A program made the position numbers and the translations under genes. Shown here one piece after another: positions 46,443-53,300 of a DNA stretch of 64,000 nt (positions within the stretch are counted from its first letter, which is position 1; each line of letters starts with the position of its first letter). The stretch lies in contig JAHLWZ010000854.1 in NCBI GenBank assembly GCA_020536535.1, forward strand, positions 1 through 64,000, in the 5' to 3' direction. The notes under the pieces were generated by a model. That model was not told where the DNA came from. It worked only from the letters and a program-made list of their open reading frames with translations, and made no database searches. This DNA comes from Pelomyxa schiedti (Eukaryota; Protista; Evosea).

Positions 46443-46591
46443 TATCAGAGAATTCAGTCTTCCCGTAACACTGTTCCGCTCCACCCTTTCACAGATCACG
46501 AGATCTCTGTGGTTGCACCTTTTTTTCAGTCCCAATCTAGCTAGAGTCGTTCTGGTGTTGCACAACACGCCGTTTGTTTTTTCACAACAAA

Positions 46592-48418
46592 ATGGGGGCT
46601 AGGCACAGGGGCGTTGTTGGTCTATTGTTGGTCTCTTTGAGTGTAGTGTTGGCTGGTGAGGGTCATTTTTGGCAGCTGACGGACTTGCACCTGGACCCCT
46701 GGTACCAACCTGGTGCCGACGTGGAAACAAAATGTACGTCTTCGCTCCTTTTTGTTTGGCGATTAATAATGCCAACAAAAATAAAAAACCGGCGGCTCTA
46801 ATTTTCCAAATCAATACAAAAGGTAGGAACTTTACAGACACAAGTAATCCTAAGGCGGGGTTGTTTGGGGATTACCATTGCGAATCATCGACTACTTTGC
46901 TTGATTCCTGGCTGGATTTTATGCGGAGGTAGGCATTTCCTCGCATTGCACAGAAGCCTCGAGGTGAGATACTCATTTGGGCATTTCACAGTGAATATGG
47001 TGATGTAGAATATGTCTTCTGGACTGGTGACTCTTCTCCCATGAATGAAAAGTGATTTCCATTTTGGAGAGGTTGAGTGTGAGGCACGGCAATTATTAAT
47101 ACTCCTTTCTACAGTTACCCGCTACCCAGTGACGACCTCCAAATGTCACAACAGCGAGTCTTTGATATTGTGCAAATCCTCACCGACAGTATCCAGTCTA
47201 CATTTGGACCCAACAACTATACCACAATTCTTCCATGTCTTGGAAATCATGAAGTTCGCGTATAAGTGAATATACTGATTTCTAAGCAATCCTTTAGGTG
47301 TGGCGTCCAAGTGTTTTCTATGGTCCAGAAGACAACAGAACCATCAACATACTACATACCATAGGAACTATGTGGGAGGTGTGAGAAACCGGTTTTAGGT
47401 AATAGAACTTATCCTGTGACAGCCATGGTTCCTGGATCAAAACGCCCATGACGACTTTTTCCAATACGGGTTCTACTCATCCCTTATCGAACCAGGGTTG
47501 CGCTTGATAAGTCTCAATACACTATGGTGCGATTCTGGGAATGTCAGATCCTGGGCACACAAGAATGGAGATGGAAATGATGTATGCCTGTAGAACTCCA
47601 GTGTACCTATTGACTCTAACATAGATCATGTTTTCATGGTTGGAAGGAATCCTTGCGCAATCCCTATCTGATGGGGAGGCAGTATGGGTAATTGGGCATG
47701 TTCCAATGAGCGCACCTAATACTATTCCCTATTGTTCTGATCAGTGGAACTCTCTCATCCTTCAATATGCTAGTATCATAAAACTGCAAGTCTATGGTTC
47801 ATATTTGGCCTATAGTTATTCTTGCCCCAACTAGAGTAACATCGCACAGGGCACACTCACTCTGATTTTTACACTGTCTTCAGTGATAAGCTGGGTACAC
47901 CCAAGAATGTACTTTATGTTTGTCCATCTCTTACCCCAGAGTCTTGGCATAAGGTGGAGCGTCGGCTTTCAAGATAATTTGCTCAATACTCTCAGGATGG
48001 TGCAAATCCAGGTGCCCGTATTTACACATATGACAAGGAAACCAAAGAAATCCTCGATTACACACAATACTACTGCAACCTTACCAAAGCAAATGAAGGT
48101 ACAGAACTCCACCCAATTGAGCAACACCAAAATTACCTCTTCAACACTCCGGTTCTTAACCTCTGTACAGAGGGGTTCATAACCTGGGAAGTTGAGTACT
48201 CTGCCCTTAGTGATTACCCTCTCAAGTCACTTGCTCCCAGCGAATGGCAATCACTCACTGATTCCCTGGAGACTGATACTACACTGTTTGAACAAGTCTG
48301 GCAGCACTATCACATTGAACATGCCTCAGAATGTGACGAGGCTTGTAAAGCAGACTTTTTGTGCCAGCTCGAGAAACCCACAGAAAAGCAATATGTGGAA
48401 TGCAAGGAAAAGTCCTAA
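46592..48418 (+). CDS. Acid sphingomyelinase-like metallophosphoesterase (SMPDL3-like)
   Basis: Signal peptide; FWQLTDLHLD; FGDYHC; WTGDSSP; GNHE; IGHVP; GHTH; NPG.RIY. Confidence 0.9.
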
Positions 48419-48488
48419 ACAAAATCTGCATTCAAAAATCACTCCTTTTTTCTTGATTTCCATGAATGACTCGTCATCACATTCCAGG

Positions 48489-49212
48489 GCGTCATCGACG
48501 GCAATTACCAGCAACGAACCTCTAAATCTGTGGTGGTCGTGCCACTGTGCAGAGGAGGTTGGGTACTCCGCATTTTTTTCGTCTCTCAGAGACCAAGGCA
48601 CAATTTCCCCTGTTATCAGGGAGATGAAAAAATGAGGAGTACCCAACCTCCCAGACGAGAGGCTGAACAACACGGAGCTTTGGGCCTGCGCCGCCTCCCT
48701 GAAATGCCCCAGTCCCGAGAGAATGGGGGCAGAGAACTTCGCCGCAGGCCCTTTCAGAAGGTGATGGATTATTCCCATCTGAGAGGGACACACCCCTATG
48801 ACGGAGCATGTTCCCTCCCAGGAGCAGGCAAACTCCCAAGGCTCCCCCCTGGGAGTTGCCTGCGAAAACAGATTTGGAGGGAGTTAACCCAGGGCGCCCC
48901 CCTGGGGCACTCCCTCCTGACATAACTTAGAGTCTGAACAGCAGAGGCTCCCCCTCTGTGTCATGACTCGAAACGAAAGTGGACCAGGCGCCCCCTGGCC
49001 ACAAAATCCCTGTCTCACACACGTTGGTTTTTCTTGCCTGAGCTGCCCACAAGGAGCAACCCAGAGAAAACCTGTGGACAGGGAGCATTGCACGATGGAT
49101 AGGTTGATAGATTGGATAACCGTGACTGCATTTGAGCTCGGTCACAGAAGGTCAAGTACTCCTCGAGGAAAAGAGCTTTCAGGGCAGGCCAATAAGAGAA
49201 CAGTTTTTTTTT
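48489..49212 (+). ncRNA. Candidate large structured non-coding RNA with four C-rich-loop hairpins
   Basis: Dense inverted repeats (48554-48651, 48682-48751, 48824-48863, 48876-48917, 48941-48959, 48979-49002, 49007-49084); closing helix about 48489-48521/49101-49129; plus-strand G-U pairs; T9 run at 49204-49212. Confidence 0.6.
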
Positions 49213-49277
49213 GGTACGGGATTGTGGGAATAAAAACATTTCGTTTTCTGTTCTCCTTTTCCGTCTTGTATCAAATA

Positions 49278-50318
49278 ATGAAGACAATCACCGTGAAGCC
49301 TTTCCGGGTGCAGTTTGCTGTTAGTAGGGAGCCTGTTGTTCTTTGTCCCTTCGAAGTGCCGCCATCGTCAGTTGCCTTGACCGACTCATGGTCTTCGCTT
49401 CCCATGGTTGCAGCCCCCACTGTAGCCTCGCCATCGGCAGTGCCCCTCTTCGACCTCTCATCCCTCCCTGGCCCACTGATTTCGGCCGTCATCGACCAGC
49501 TGGCCTCCTCCCCGCGCGACCTCCTCGCCCTGGGCCGCACCTGCCGCCCGCTGGCCGGCCGCACCCGCTCGCAGGACCTCTGGCGCCGCGTCTTCTCGCA
49601 GGCCCAGAGCGCCCGCGCCTTCTGGCACGAGGAGCAGCGGCGCCCGGCGGAGCCCTGGTTCTGCTTCGTGCTGCGCATGGCCCACGCCCCGCGCCACTCG
49701 CGCCTGCTGCTCGCCGCCCTCTGCATCTGCCCCGGGGGCAGCGGCGTCGCGACCCACCCGCTGGCGGCGAAGGGGTGGCCCGAGGGGCTGCTGGAGAGGC
49801 TGCCGGGGTTTTACTTGTCTGTGCAGCATCCGGTTTGGCCCGATTCTGGGGAGCCCGGAGAGATTACGGGGTTTGAGGATTTGTACAGGACGGCGTATAA
49901 GTAAGGCTTGTTTGTGTGCCACACATCTGTCATCACTGTTTTGGGTGGACTTGTTTAAAGCTTGTGTCTATGGGGAATTGAATGGCCAACTGACTGAAAA
50001 AACCACCAGTTGTGTGCTTCATAAAAAGCGCATAGAGTTTGATTGTATTCTGGAATACATTCTATTTCACGCTGCTGAACGTACTACCTGTGACATCATG
50101 GCCAATTCGCCTGCCAAGGTAAGAACCTTACCCACAAATTATTGACTAACTTTTTGTTACGCACTAAGGAAGAAACCATACAGAAATACCGTACTTTCAG
50201 TACAATGTTGGCTGATGTATGTGCATATCGGAACCGTGTGGAGAATTGTGAGGCAATACAGAATATCGCTGATAGGGTTTTATCCCGAGCCATGGAAAAA
50301 CACCACCTCACGTTTTAG
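49278..50318 (+). CDS. F-box protein
   Basis: LSSLPGPLISAVIDQL...DLLALGRTCRPL...DLWRRVF; short introns after about 49900 and 50118; TAG 50316-50318. Confidence 0.75.
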
Positions 50319-50355
50319 TTGTATAAGAAGAAGGAATAAAATTATATTTGTTCAA

Positions 50356-53300
50356 CTATTCTTTCTTGGACATGTAGGTTTTGCACACATTCATCAGTGA
50401 ACCTTTTCGAGCTGTCATCATTCCACGGAACTCTGGAGACTGTATGAGCGCGGTCCGCTCGGAATTTATCACTGAAGTGAGGGTTATTCCAGAATGACAA
50501 GAATCTTTGAACACACTTTTCAATAGAAGCCATTCGCGTGTCTGCTCATTGTTTGGGAAACTGACAGGTTCGGGCATGAAGGGAGGATAGGGAGACACTC
50601 CAGCTTTGTTGGCTACTATAATATTATACCCTGTTGTGGCGTTTGTAGTGCTGTCGACAATTGCTTCAACAAGGAAGAAGCCATCTGGAATTTATGTTAA
50701 AAGGAATCATACTTGACTGTAACCAATACGTACGAAGGAAGTGCGAAGTGAGCAGTTTTGGAGTAAATAAGTCCTTGGGGTTTGTGGGGTCACGCTCTTT
50801 AAAAATTACAGAAACCTTGGAATGGTAAAATTAGAAAAAAATTTTAAATATTTAATTGATATTAATTTATATGAAATTAATAAAATAACAAAAGCGCACC
50901 ACATCATTCCCGATATGCCGTTTTCTTTCCACACGTTGAAGATCATCAGGTTGGAAAGGTAAGTATGTGCAAACCTTGAAATGATGTTTTGAATTTGGGT
51001 AAAAAATAGAAAACGTACATGATACATTATCTCGTAATCTCTGAATGACGTATAAACAGAAAATTTCCCTGTGGAACCGGCTGTTTATTCACCAATGAGA
51101 TGCGTGAGATCCGGAGACTGAGGGAAAATACTTTTTACATCAAGACCAGCTCGGTACTTGGTCCAGCCTTCTAATGTAACTTTAGTCCCAAGGAAATCGA
51201 GAAACTCCTGATAACGTGGGGATGCATCAGTTTCCACTTAAAGTGCATCAGATGAAGGCATAAGGAAATGAGATACTACAATTACTAAATATGTCGTTTT
51301 CATCAATTTGGTTTGGCTTCACCCACAGAACGCCAATCTTGTACGCACGCACACAGCTTCTTTCTTCAAAATTGAGTAAATCTTTGGATAATTCTGTTTG
51401 CGCCTTGACACGAACTAACTTGGTGTCCCTGGTAAAAATAAGTTTAAATAACACTGGGGAGGCCATACTTCAATCGAAGAATGGATGAGCCAACAAACCG
51501 GGCAGACTCGGTTGAGGGTATCAAAGCTCTGTCTACTCCCTATCACTAGCTTTAATTATTCTTATCACAAGAAAAAAGATTACCTTTTTCGAAATAATCA
51601 GCACTCTCCGAGGTAAAACCTCTTTGCTTTCTACTTGTTGAATTGCAGCAATAATGGGTGATCCTTCTGATATACAACAGAATATGTCATGGGCTGCAGT
51701 GTTTTAGTCCTTGACGCAAACAGAGGAAAAGCATACGCTGCCCGTAAAAGAATTCCTTATAAAATAAGAAGTACCGATGAGGATCGATGAAGCCAAAAGG
51801 TTCTATTTCATCCCGCTTTGTGGATGTCACACTTCTGGCATCATACTCAACTGAAAACGCACCTCCTGCTGGTGTGGTACATGCCACATCAATTGCAGGT
51901 ACACCGTACTTTTCTATGTTCGGTTCTGTCCCCTGTGATTTGATAAATGCTTGGGCTATCAAGTCAATGGAAGGGAACGGACTGTCCAAGTTTCATGTGG
52001 GTAGGGAGAGCTTGTCCAGTGATCAACAAAGCCAGATCCCCAAGCTAAGTTTTCCATAGATCTAATTGCTGTCACCAAAGCAGCACGATCATGAATTATT
52101 CTGAATTGGTTCTCAGAAAATAGTCTAGCAAAAGATAGGTACTTGCTAGGGAGAGCTGGCACAGTTTCACCAGAGCCAGTTGATGTCTGAAAAAGAGCAA
52201 GGTTTTTGCGGAGTTTTGTTGACATGGCCCCAACAGGAATTTCTGGTGAAGACGGGATGTTAGTGGATGAGAAGGGAGCATGGCAAAAATTACCAGATAT
52301 AATATTAGAAATATTTTTGAGTTTAAACATCGGCTCAGCTGGTTTAGCTGGCTGTGGTACTGGCATTGGTTGGTCACGCTGTGGAATGTTAACGAGCGCA
52401 AATCGTGGGCATTCTTACAAGGGTGGCACCAGTTCCCCATGATTCCATGGCAGCACCCAAATGCCCTGTGTGCTTGAATGTAATGGGGTCGGAGATAGCA
52501 AAGTCCTAAGTGGACTAAGGGAAAAGGCAGCAGAATGAATACATACATCTTTTTTAGGCTTTCTTTTTGGTGCGTCTTTATGGGTTGTCACTGGGTGGGG
52601 ATGTGATGTAGGTGCTGGTGTTGGTGTTGATGTTGATGTTGATGAAAATGTTGATGTCGATGTCGATGTCGATGTAGCGGCTGGTGTTTGTGTTGCTGTC
52701 GGTGACACCGGTGGTGCTGGTGTTGGCGTTGGTGATGGCGTTACAACTGATATTGATGGTGATTGCGACGGTGATGACGAAAGTGTGGGCGATGAGGTTA
52801 CTGTTATTGTAGGTGTGGATAATGGTTGGCTCTGCGCATTTGTAGTGGTCCCCGAAGATGGAGGAGCGGGAGCAGCAGGAAGTGGCTTTCCAGGTACGAG
52901 ATGAATGTGCATTGGCTTCTGAGCTGTTGGAGGTAGAGGAGGAAGTTGTTTGGAGGGGTGACTGATCCCAGATGTGCTCTGTGTAGGGGGAGTTGCATTT
53001 TCTGCTCCTTCTTCACCTTTAAACATTCCGATAAATTGACGTGACTGTCCAGTTTTCCTTCCAATGGAATTGAACCAATTTGGGGGGCGCTGCGGAGCAG
53101 ATTGATTTGTAGATTGCCAAGAGTGACTTTGTGCAACATCCAAGTAGGCAATGGATTGAATCTGAGACTGTGTTGGAGTAGCTTCTTGGGCTGATTGACC
53201 CAAATTTTGGAGTTTTAATTCTTCTTCCTTTGAGGAAACTTGAGATTCATCGGTGGGCTGCATAACGCCTTCATCATTTACAATAGACGCACTCTGGTCA

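What the first reader, a model, noticed from the sequence alone, without database searches (positions are those of the whole stretch)
48489..49212. About 700-nt intergenic, densely folded element with four hairpins sharing an AGG-C(U/G)CCC-CCU apex
Seen: the spacer between the SMPDL3-like stop (48418) and the F-box ATG (49278) is far longer than its neighbours and extensively paired. Stems: a perfect 16-bp stem GGAGGTTGGGTACTCC 48554-48569/48636-48651, extended inward and capped by two small hairpins; GGGCCTGCG/CGCAGGCCC 48682-48751; long-range TCTAAATCTGT 48521-48531 with ACAGATTTGGA 48868-48878; CCCTGTC...GACAGGG enclosing GGTTTT...AAAACC (49007-49084); and an interrupted closing helix about 48489-48521/49101-49129. 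Four consecutive hairpins (48824-48863, 48876-48917, 48941-48959, 48979-49002) have different stems but the same apex, GG-CUCCC(C)-CC or GG-CGCCC-CC. Wobbles work on the + strand, and a T9 run follows (49204-49212, Pol III terminator-like). Inference: a conserved loop on unrelated stems points to selection on an RNA structure, such as a multivalent protein-binding scaffold or sponge, kissing loops with GGGAG/GGGCG tracts (48486, 48619, 49081), or an IRES-like leader. I could not match it by eye to snRNA, SRP, RNase P/MRP or ribozyme consensus motifs.
Basis: partly seen in the sequence, partly recalled or inferred. Interest (0 to 1): 0.82.

Follow-up and report, generated by a model that had tools for sequence, protein, structure and literature searches.

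The report
Abundant unknown structured RNA gene
The "spacer" is a stand-alone gene on the opposite strand for a heavily expressed, about 530-base folded RNA that encodes no protein, has two diverged sister copies in this amoeba's genome, and matches no described RNA family.

Summary
The strand, the borders and the terminator in that reading are wrong.

- **What it is:** a gene on the minus strand, 49164 down to 48627 (531 nt plus a U6 tail).
- **Expression:** single-cell RNA-seq contigs cover only 48639-49164, at depth 100-330. Both neighbouring genes have zero depth. A template-switch-oligo junction puts the RNA 5' end at 49164 on the minus strand.
- **Copies:** the 52-Mb genome holds exactly three. 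Their ends are 82-92% identical and their interiors 44-51%.
- **Promoter and terminator:** each copy has TCCCAYAATCCC at exactly -65 to -54, a Dictyostelium-type DUSE. This genome's U6, RNase MRP and U2 genes carry it at the same distance. Each copy ends in a T6-T9 run, as U6, SRP and MRP do and U2 does not.
- **Fold:** a roughly 45-bp closing helix rich in conserved G-U pairs, a single-stranded UAUCCA tract, and exactly four hairpins with GG-GGGMK-CC apexes on covarying stems.
- **Known families:** Rfam gives no hit. Canonical SRP and MRP RNAs lie elsewhere, and there is no telomere template.
- **Rejected readings:** it is not a MITE or SINE, not an mRNA leader or IRES, and not coding.

Function is unknown. 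My best guess is a stable, probably Pol III-made RNA-protein particle that presents four repeated protein-binding loops. An earlier scan note (s1-383119) reports a bulk-expressed unknown RNA elsewhere in this genome. I could not tell whether it belongs to this family.

The parts
48627..49164 (-). Transcribed region of the RNA gene: 531 nt starting GAGGAGUACUUG, plus a U6 tail
   Evidence: RNA-seq contigs cover 48639-49164 only. The template-switch-oligo junction lies behind 49164. Homology with the two paralogues ends at the same borders.
49218..49229 (-). DUSE-like upstream promoter element TCCCACAATCCC, at -65 to -54
   Evidence: It sits at the identical distance in all three copies. CCCAYAA lies at -59 to -66 of U6, RNase MRP and U2 genes in the same genome. 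DUSE lies about 60 nt upstream of Dictyostelium ncRNA genes (PMC7919456).
49189..49212 (-). Second conserved upstream block: an A-run followed by a TTATTGG-type element at about -31
   Evidence: It is conserved in register in the three copies. TATTTTCGAGG-type elements at about -31 occur in U2 and U6 genes.
48627..48632 (-). T6 run directly after the last paired base; a Pol III-type terminator
   Evidence: The paralogues have T9 and T7 at the same place. U6, SRP and MRP genes here end in T8-T11, and U2 genes have no such run. No internal T run exceeds 4.
49113..49164 (-). 5' strand of closing helix P1 (RNA nt 1-52). It includes most of a 31-nt block (RNA nt 23-53) identical in all three copies
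48634..48677 (-). 3' strand of closing helix P1 (RNA nt 488-531). It includes a 19-nt block identical in all three copies
   Evidence: P1 duplex energy is -43 to -47 kcal/mol in sense against -30 to -38 in antisense.
49085..49112 (-). Conserved single-stranded tract with two or three UAUCCA repeats, followed by YKUGCAWU
   Evidence: It is unpaired in the consensus and in the single-sequence folds. The motifs are shared by all three copies.
49007..49084 (-). Long irregular hairpin D1. Its sequence varies between copies but its position is kept
48982..49000 (-). Pentaloop hairpin H1 (loop GGGCG)
48930..48969 (-). Pentaloop hairpin H2 (loop GGGAG) on an extended stem
48876..48917 (-). Pentaloop hairpin H3 (loop GGGCG) on an extended stem
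48824..48863 (-). Pentaloop hairpin H4 (loop GGGAG)
48763..48820 (-). Two variable hairpins (RNA nt 345-402)
48682..48751 (-). Long 3'-proximal hairpin, with compensatory changes between copies
   Evidence: (I9).
48554..48582 (+). Inverted partial duplicate of the gene's 3' end, including a T7 run. It lies outside the transcript and occurs only in this copy
Evidence: (I1).

Best explanation
Window 49164 down to 48627 on the minus strand is an independent gene for an abundant noncoding RNA of about 530 nt. It is one of three diverged paralogues in this amoeba's genome.

**Shown**
- The RNA is made at high level while both neighbouring genes are silent in the same library.
- Its 5' end is the G at 49164.
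- Each copy has a DUSE-type element at -65 to -54, a second element at about -31, and a T6-T9 run at the 3' end. This matches the snRNA-type genes of the same genome, and the T run matches the Pol III ones.
- The two ends pair into a roughly 45-bp helix with invariant G-U pairs.
- The interior keeps its architecture while its sequence drifts.
- Each copy carries exactly four hairpins with the apex GG-GGG(A/C)(G/U)-CC.

**Inferred**
- It is transcribed by RNA polymerase III.
- The 3' oligo-U and the closing helix protect it, with La-type binding.
- It lives as a stable RNA-protein particle.
- The four identical G-rich pentaloops, and perhaps the UAUCCA tract and the invariant internal loop of the closing helix, are repeated docking sites for a protein. 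That would make it a multivalent scaffold or sponge.
For: **Expression and strand**
- contigs from RNA run X4 cover only 48639-49164 at depth 100-330. The 2 kb on the SMPDL3-like side and the 1.3 kb on the F-box side have zero depth.
- The letters behind 49164 are the reverse complement of the Smart-seq template-switch oligo (identified from my own knowledge of that oligo). This puts the RNA 5' end at 49164 on the minus strand.
- The C811 paralogue is expressed in the same library.
- Sediment and freshwater metatranscriptomes hold near-identical pieces.

**Copy number**
- Searches find exactly three copies.

**Promoter and terminator**
-, together with PMC7919456.

**Structure**
- sense z = -9.7, -5.8 and -7.3; antisense z = -6.2, -4.2 and -4.9.
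- 132 consensus pairs with 91% of cells paired, and 60 G-U against 10 A-C cells. Mirrored onto the antisense strand, pairing falls to 78%. In the interior, 20 pairs changed on both sides, against 3-9 when the partners are slid.
- four apexes per copy at matching positions.

**Noncoding**
- tblastx conservation is equal in all frames.
- no ORF is shared between copies.
Against: - No protein partner, localisation or phenotype is known, so the scaffold function is pure inference.
- The 5' end rests on one contig, and the 3' end is not mapped (the last RNA contig ends at 48639 in a Tn5 adaptor).
- Pol III is inferred from the T run only. A 530-nt Pol III product is long, and T4 runs occur inside.
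- With three sequences, covariation has little statistical power.
- No relatives outside this species were retrievable. One metagenome pattern scan was blank and the other gave only chance hits.
Confidence: 0.6

Rival explanations
1. Precursor of small RNAs. The roughly 45-bp, nearly perfect closing helix is cut by a Dicer-like enzyme, and the conserved arm sequences are the functional products. The interior would be a processing platform.
For: The helix is a long duplex with blocks identical in all copies: 31 nt on the 5' arm and 19 nt on the 3' arm.
Against: - RNA-seq contigs cover the whole interior at high depth, so the full-length RNA is stable.
- The four interior apexes are as conserved as the helix.
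- The identical 31-nt block runs into the single-stranded tract.
- No small-RNA data were available.
Confidence: 0.12
2. A very divergent member of a known Pol III scaffold class, such as Y or vault RNA bound by a TROVE protein, a 7SK-like RNA, or telomerase RNA.
For: It shares general traits with those classes: an external snRNA-type promoter, a U tail, a conserved terminal stem with a variable interior, and small paralogue families as in Y and vault RNAs.
Against: - No Rfam model hits any of the three copies, even at E up to 5-10.
- At 520-530 nt it is 1.6 to 5 times larger than those RNAs (sizes from my own knowledge).
- No template for TTAGGG or for the GGGATT arrays is present.
- Three diverged, co-expressed copies argue against telomerase RNA.
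Confidence: 0.12
3. Mobile or repeat-derived element: a MITE with terminal inverted repeats, a SINE, or a solo LTR.
For: The ends are inverted repeats, GAGGAGTAC ... GTACTCCTC (I6). A partial inverted duplicate lies next to the gene at 48554-48582.
Against: - There are only three copies.
- The copies include the upstream promoter at a fixed distance, which retroposition would not carry.
- I saw no target-site duplication, though flanks were inspected by eye only.
- The interior shows compensatory change, and the helix is strand-asymmetric through its G-U pairs.
Confidence: 0.04
4. Cis-acting part of a neighbouring mRNA: an IRES-like leader of the F-box gene or a 3'UTR of the upstream gene.
For: It lies between the two genes. 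An in-frame ORF (48963-49904) runs from inside the element into the F-box gene.
Against: - RNA coverage stops at 48639 and 49164, and both neighbours have zero depth.
- The RNA is on the opposite strand.
- The paralogues have unrelated neighbours.
Confidence: 0.02

Closest known systems
Dictyostelid DUSE-driven ncRNA genes, especially Class I RNAs (PMC7919456)
   Same: It is an amoebozoan noncoding RNA. It has a CCC-containing DUSE about 60 nt upstream, starts with G, pairs its 5' and 3' ends into a stem, ends in a T run, is abundantly expressed and has several paralogues.
   Different: Class I RNAs are 42-65 nt, with a short stem and an 11-nt motif. This RNA is 517-531 nt, with a 45-bp closing helix, four pentaloop hairpins and none of the Class I sequence motifs.
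Y RNAs and vault RNAs (small Pol III RNA paralogue families)
   Same: It has an external snRNA-type promoter, a U tail, and a terminal stem conserved between paralogues with a variable interior. It comes as a few co-expressed paralogues.
   Different: It is four to five times longer. There is no Rfam hit. The conserved Ro-binding helix sequence and the internal A/B boxes were not seen. Repeated identical loops are not a feature of Y or vault RNAs.
7SK RNA
   Same: It is an abundant Pol III-type scaffold with repeated short motifs on hairpins, 5'/3' end pairing and a U tail.
   Different: 7SK is about 330 nt, is known only from animals, and uses GAUC motifs. There is no model hit here, and HEXIM-type partners are not known in amoebae (from my own knowledge).
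Bacterial CsrB/RsmZ-type protein sponges
   Same: The same short G-rich motif is displayed in the loops of several hairpins with unrelated stems, which implies multivalent capture of one protein.
   Different: Those are bacterial RNAs with GGA loops and many more sites. There is no homology; the analogy is one of design only.

Membership tests
DUSE-dependent snRNA-type ncRNA gene (Amoebozoa) | A [A/T]CCCAYAA element about 60 nt upstream of the transcription start | tested here: met
   TCCCAYAATCCC lies at -65 to -54 in all three copies. U6 has it at -65/-66 in 5 of 6 genes, MRP at -63 and U2 at -59 to -64. The definition is from PMC7919456.
Pol III-transcribed gene | A run of T directly at the 3' end, and no long T run inside | tested here: met
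   The three copies end in T6, T9 and T7, and the longest internal run is T4. U6, SRP and MRP genes here end in T8-T11, and U2 genes have none. Polymerase identity itself cannot be tested with these tools.
SRP RNA (7SL) | A match to the SRP covariance models (Alu and S domains, helix 8 motif) | tested here: not met
   There is no hit at E up to 10. Six canonical SRP RNA loci of about 280 nt lie elsewhere in the genome.
RNase MRP / RNase P RNA | A match to the covariance model (P4 pseudoknot, CR-I/CR-V) | tested here: not met
   There is no hit. The canonical RNase MRP RNA is at C811:110023-110515. RNase P was covered only by the Rfam scans of the three loci; its canonical copy was not sought.
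Telomerase RNA | A single-stranded template of about 1.5 telomere repeats; normally a single-copy gene | tested here: not met
   No 7-9-mer of (CCCTAA)n or of the GGGATT/AATCCC arrays occurs in any copy. There are three diverged, expressed copies. The true telomere repeat of this genome was not established.
MITE / SINE | Many dispersed copies with target-site duplications; for SINEs, no upstream promoter carried along | tested here: not met
   There are three copies only. The upstream promoter is conserved in register. No target-site duplication was seen, by eye only.
Y RNA / vault RNA / 7SK | A match to the family covariance model; a size of 80-330 nt | tested here: not met
   Rfam release 15 gives no hit on any copy. 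The copies are 517-531 nt. Protein partners cannot be tested with these tools.
mRNA leader / IRES of the F-box gene | Transcribed on the plus strand, contiguous with the coding region | tested here: not met
   RNA contigs end at 49164, with zero depth over 49180-50500. The template-switch junction shows a minus-strand 5' end.
Protein-coding exon | A frame-specific conservation pattern, or an ORF shared between paralogues | tested here: not met
   tblastx scores are equal in all frames. The longest ORFs differ between copies.

The most novel reading that the evidence does not exclude
This is the founding member of an undescribed class of abundant amoebozoan Pol III RNA-protein particles. It would be a half-kilobase RNA whose four invariant GGG pentaloops capture four copies of one protein, or come together through their G triplets. 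It would act as a cellular sponge or assembly platform, comparable in design to 7SK or CsrB but unrelated to both, and it would be widespread enough to appear in sediment, freshwater and peat metatranscriptomes.
Probability: 0.35. Interest if true: 0.8.

Novelty: categorically new. Interest (0 to 1): 0.66.

Why it matters
Almost all known abundant Pol III-type RNAs (7SL, U6, MRP, P, Y, vault, 7SK) were defined in animals, yeasts and plants. Amoebozoa outside Dictyostelium are nearly unexplored.

This is a well-delimited gene: promoter, start and terminator are all identified. Its RNA is large, very abundant and under clear structural selection, yet it fits none of those classes. It has a repeated-loop design that normally signals multivalent protein capture.

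It is directly testable by northern blot, pull-down with mass spectrometry, and knock-out. The three natural paralogues already act as a mutational series that marks the functional parts.

It also shows that a DUSE at fixed distance plus a T run can be used to mine this genome for further unknown RNA genes.

Tried and rejected
- **Rfam:** the gathering scan of the whole window and the E-value scans of all three copies gave nothing, apart from weak miRNA-model hits on the palindrome at 48553-48651. That palindrome lies partly outside the transcript.
- **tRNA or tmRNA:** none.
- **Metagenome scans for relatives:** a 20-mer from the 3'-side block (plus-strand sense) gave 0 hits. A 19-mer from the other block gave 43 hits, mostly on long contigs that include human-gut metagenome assemblies. 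None carries the second block, so I treat them as chance and did not examine them further.
- **Viral contigs:** 0 hits.
- **Earlier findings by sequence:** blank.
- **Literature search for an amoebal RNA of this kind:** nothing specific.
- **Telomerase-template idea:** rejected.
- **SRP and MRP identity:** rejected.
- **Plus-strand reading, T9 as terminator, the 48489-48521/49101-49129 closing helix, and kissing partners at 48486 and 48619:** rejected, because they lie on the wrong strand or outside the transcript.
- **The two 'skips' in DNA run X1 (48681 to 49111 and 48711 to 49112):** these are the paralogues aligning only at the conserved ends. They are not deletions or splicing.
- **Left out:** I did not run the formal pair-count tool, because it needs a 601-character typed structure string. 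The same counts were made in a script instead.

Full report
**1. The observation**

The 724-nt stretch folds far better than dinucleotide shuffles on both strands: z = -7.8 on plus and -8.7 on minus. So the structure is real. Which strand matters, where the element begins and ends, and what it is had to be worked out separately.

**2. Copies elsewhere in the genome**

The window is contig C854 of a 52.4-Mb genome in 5,337 contigs. An earlier agent's note calls the organism an amoeba, and the promoter findings below are consistent with an amoebozoan.
- A DNA search of the genome found two further partial matches, on C811 and C1061.
- Pattern searches with up to 3 mismatches for three conserved blocks found these three loci and no credible others.
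- A pattern for two neighbouring apex motifs occurs 7 times, all within the three loci, against 0 for the control.
- Flanking genes are unrelated, and tblastx conservation is equal in all frames, so the conservation is noncoding.
- The copies are 82-92% identical at the two ends and only 44-51% in the interior.
- Blocks of 12, 31 and 19 nt are identical in all three.

Three copies rule out a high-copy MITE or SINE.

**3. Expression, strand and ends**

Twelve public runs were listed as holding part of the stretch, ten of them on record as RNA. I laid four of them on 46500-50500.
- Run X1 is genomic. Its long contigs span the whole stretch at even depth.
- Run X4 is a single-cell RNA-seq library. 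It covers only 48639-49164, at word depth 100-330. It has zero depth over the upstream gene (46500-48509) and the F-box gene (49180-50500). This is therefore not DNA contamination, and the element is not part of either mRNA.
- Behind 49164, an X4 contig continues with CCCATGTACTCTGCGTTGATACC. From my own knowledge this is the reverse complement of the Smart-seq template-switch oligo ending ...ACATGGG. That oligo marks the 5' end of the RNA. The RNA therefore starts at the G at 49164 and runs on the minus strand.
- The other border of coverage, 48639, is a Tn5 adaptor, so the 3' end lies a little further on.
- X4 also holds the C811 paralogue, shown by the loose end before 49112.
- A sediment metatranscriptome (X5) holds a 239-nt contig with 1 mismatch and 3 gaps.
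- A freshwater metatranscriptome (X6) holds a 168-nt piece with 2 differences, plus a piece resembling the C1061 copy.

Detection in small and environmental RNA libraries suggests a very abundant RNA.

**4. Gene anatomy**

Read on the minus strand, the three copies begin GAGGAGUACUUG and are 531, 521 and 517 nt long. They end ...CUCCUC followed by (A)T6, (A)T9 or T7.
- TCCCAYAATCCC lies at exactly -65 to -54 in all three, although the sequence between it and the start has diverged.
- The same core, CCCAYAA, lies at -65/-66 of five of six U6 genes examined, at -63 of the RNase MRP RNA gene, and at -59 to -64 of five U2 genes in this genome.
- This matches the Dictyostelium upstream sequence element (DUSE). 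That element has three consecutive C, lies about 60 nt upstream, and is used by both Pol II and Pol III ncRNA genes (PMC7919456).
- A second block at about -31 (TTATTGG, CTATTCGG, CCATCAGG) resembles the TATTTTCGAGG-type element at the same place in U2 and U6 genes.
- The T run at the 3' end matches U6, SRP and MRP genes (T8-T11). Five of five U2 genes lack it and have A-rich sequence instead.
- Inside the three RNAs, no T run exceeds 4.

I infer transcription by Pol III. This is not shown.

**5. Structure**
- Each copy folds better in sense than in antisense. MFE is -271, -227 and -230 kcal/mol in sense against -222, -211 and -212 in antisense. The z-scores are -9.7, -5.8 and -7.3 against -6.2, -4.2 and -4.9.
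- The consensus fold has 132 pairs with 91% of cells paired.
- It contains 60 G-U cells and 10 A-C cells. The same pairs read on the other strand give 78% pairing, with 10 G-U and 60 A-C cells.
- The interior has 20 pairs changed on both sides, against 3-9 when the partners are slid by 1-2 columns.

The architecture is shared by the three single-sequence folds:
- a closing helix P1 of about 45 bp between nt 1-52 and nt 488-531, with an invariant asymmetric internal loop and several invariant G-U pairs
- a single-stranded tract with two or three UAUCCA repeats
- a long variable hairpin
- four hairpins whose apex is always GG-GGG(A/C)(G/U)-CC, at nt 170/211/264/317, 181/228/280/332 and 174/220/273/327 in the three copies, on stems that differ and covary
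- a variable region
- a long 3'-proximal hairpin with compensatory changes

That segment is an inverted partial duplicate of the gene's 3' end, including a T7 run. It lies beyond the terminator and is absent from the paralogues.

**6. What it is not**
- Rfam release 15 gives no family at gathering score in the window. At E up to 5-10 nothing relevant hits any of the three copies.
- Canonical SRP RNA (six loci of about 280 nt) and RNase MRP RNA (C811:110023-110515) lie elsewhere.
- No template for TTAGGG or for the GGGATT arrays is present.
- No ORF is shared between copies.
- It is not the leader or UTR of a neighbouring mRNA.

**7. How it probably works**

Shown: this is a stand-alone, strongly expressed, structurally constrained RNA gene family with snRNA-type promoter elements and a T-run end.

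Inferred:
- Pol III makes the RNA.
- The U tail and the long closing helix stabilise it.
- The parts kept invariant through heavy divergence are protein contacts. These parts are the P1 internal loop region, the UAUCCA tract and the four GGGMK pentaloops with their two closing G-C pairs.

Four identical loops on unrelated stems is the design of multivalent binders such as CsrB/RsmZ or 7SK. I therefore favour a scaffold or sponge RNA-protein particle, at about 0.6 for the whole statement and less for the specific function.

Rivals are a small-RNA precursor using the 45-bp helix (0.12), a very divergent member of a known scaffold class (0.12), a mobile element (0.04) and a cis-acting mRNA part (0.02).

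**8. Novelty and caveats**

I found no described family that fits. The nearest in gene organisation are the DUSE-driven RNAs of dictyostelids, but those are ten times smaller and share no motifs.

Caveats:
- The 5' end rests on a single contig.
- The 3' end is unmapped.
- Only three sequences support the covariation.
- Organism names were coded.
- No relatives outside the species could be fetched.
I could not determine whether it is one of the two paralogues or a different family.
- Note s1-611444 describes this same stretch with the GGGAG/GGGCG reading, which my strand analysis supports.

Noticed in passing
genome-wide (G000); window 49218-49229: The 12-mer TCCCAYAATCCC occurs 389 times in the genome, against 8 for the reversed control. 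In the 30 sampled sites, some lie shortly upstream of ATG codons and others inside repeated, coding-looking sequence. It may be a general promoter element beyond ncRNA genes.
   Followed up: partly
G000:C811:110023-110515: The RNase MRP RNA match spans about 490 nt, unusually long. It has a DUSE-like ACCCATAAG at -63 and a T11 run about 13 nt after the model's end.
   Followed up: partly
genome-wide (G000): (TTAGGG)4 occurs only twice. The reversed control (GGGATT)4 occurs 11 times, so GGGATT/AATCCC arrays are the commoner of the two. I did not check whether either is the telomere repeat.
   Followed up: no
window 48554-48582: A 28-nt inverted duplicate of the RNA gene's 3' end, including a T7 run, lies 48 nt beyond the terminator. 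It may be a remnant of a tail-to-tail second copy. It is absent from the paralogues.
   Followed up: partly
window 48822 and 48815: RNA runs X4 and X6 carry G>T at 48822, and X6 also carries C>A at 48815. X4 holds both forms at 48822. These are probably strain or allele differences.
   Followed up: no
window 39722, 41094, 45214: The same 17-mer, ACGAGTCCCACAATTGC, with identical downstream sequence, recurs three times on the plus strand. The repeat was seen in sequence only; its overlap with ORFs was not checked.
   Followed up: no
genome-wide (G000): Spliceosomal RNA genes are highly multicopy: about 20 U6 loci and about 30 U2 loci. All examined loci carry a DUSE-like element near -60.
   Followed up: partly
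window 48963-49904: An ATG-initiated ORF of 313 aa runs in frame from inside the RNA gene into the F-box gene. The part upstream of 49278 overlaps the minus-strand RNA gene and its promoter, and is most likely not translated.
   Followed up: partly
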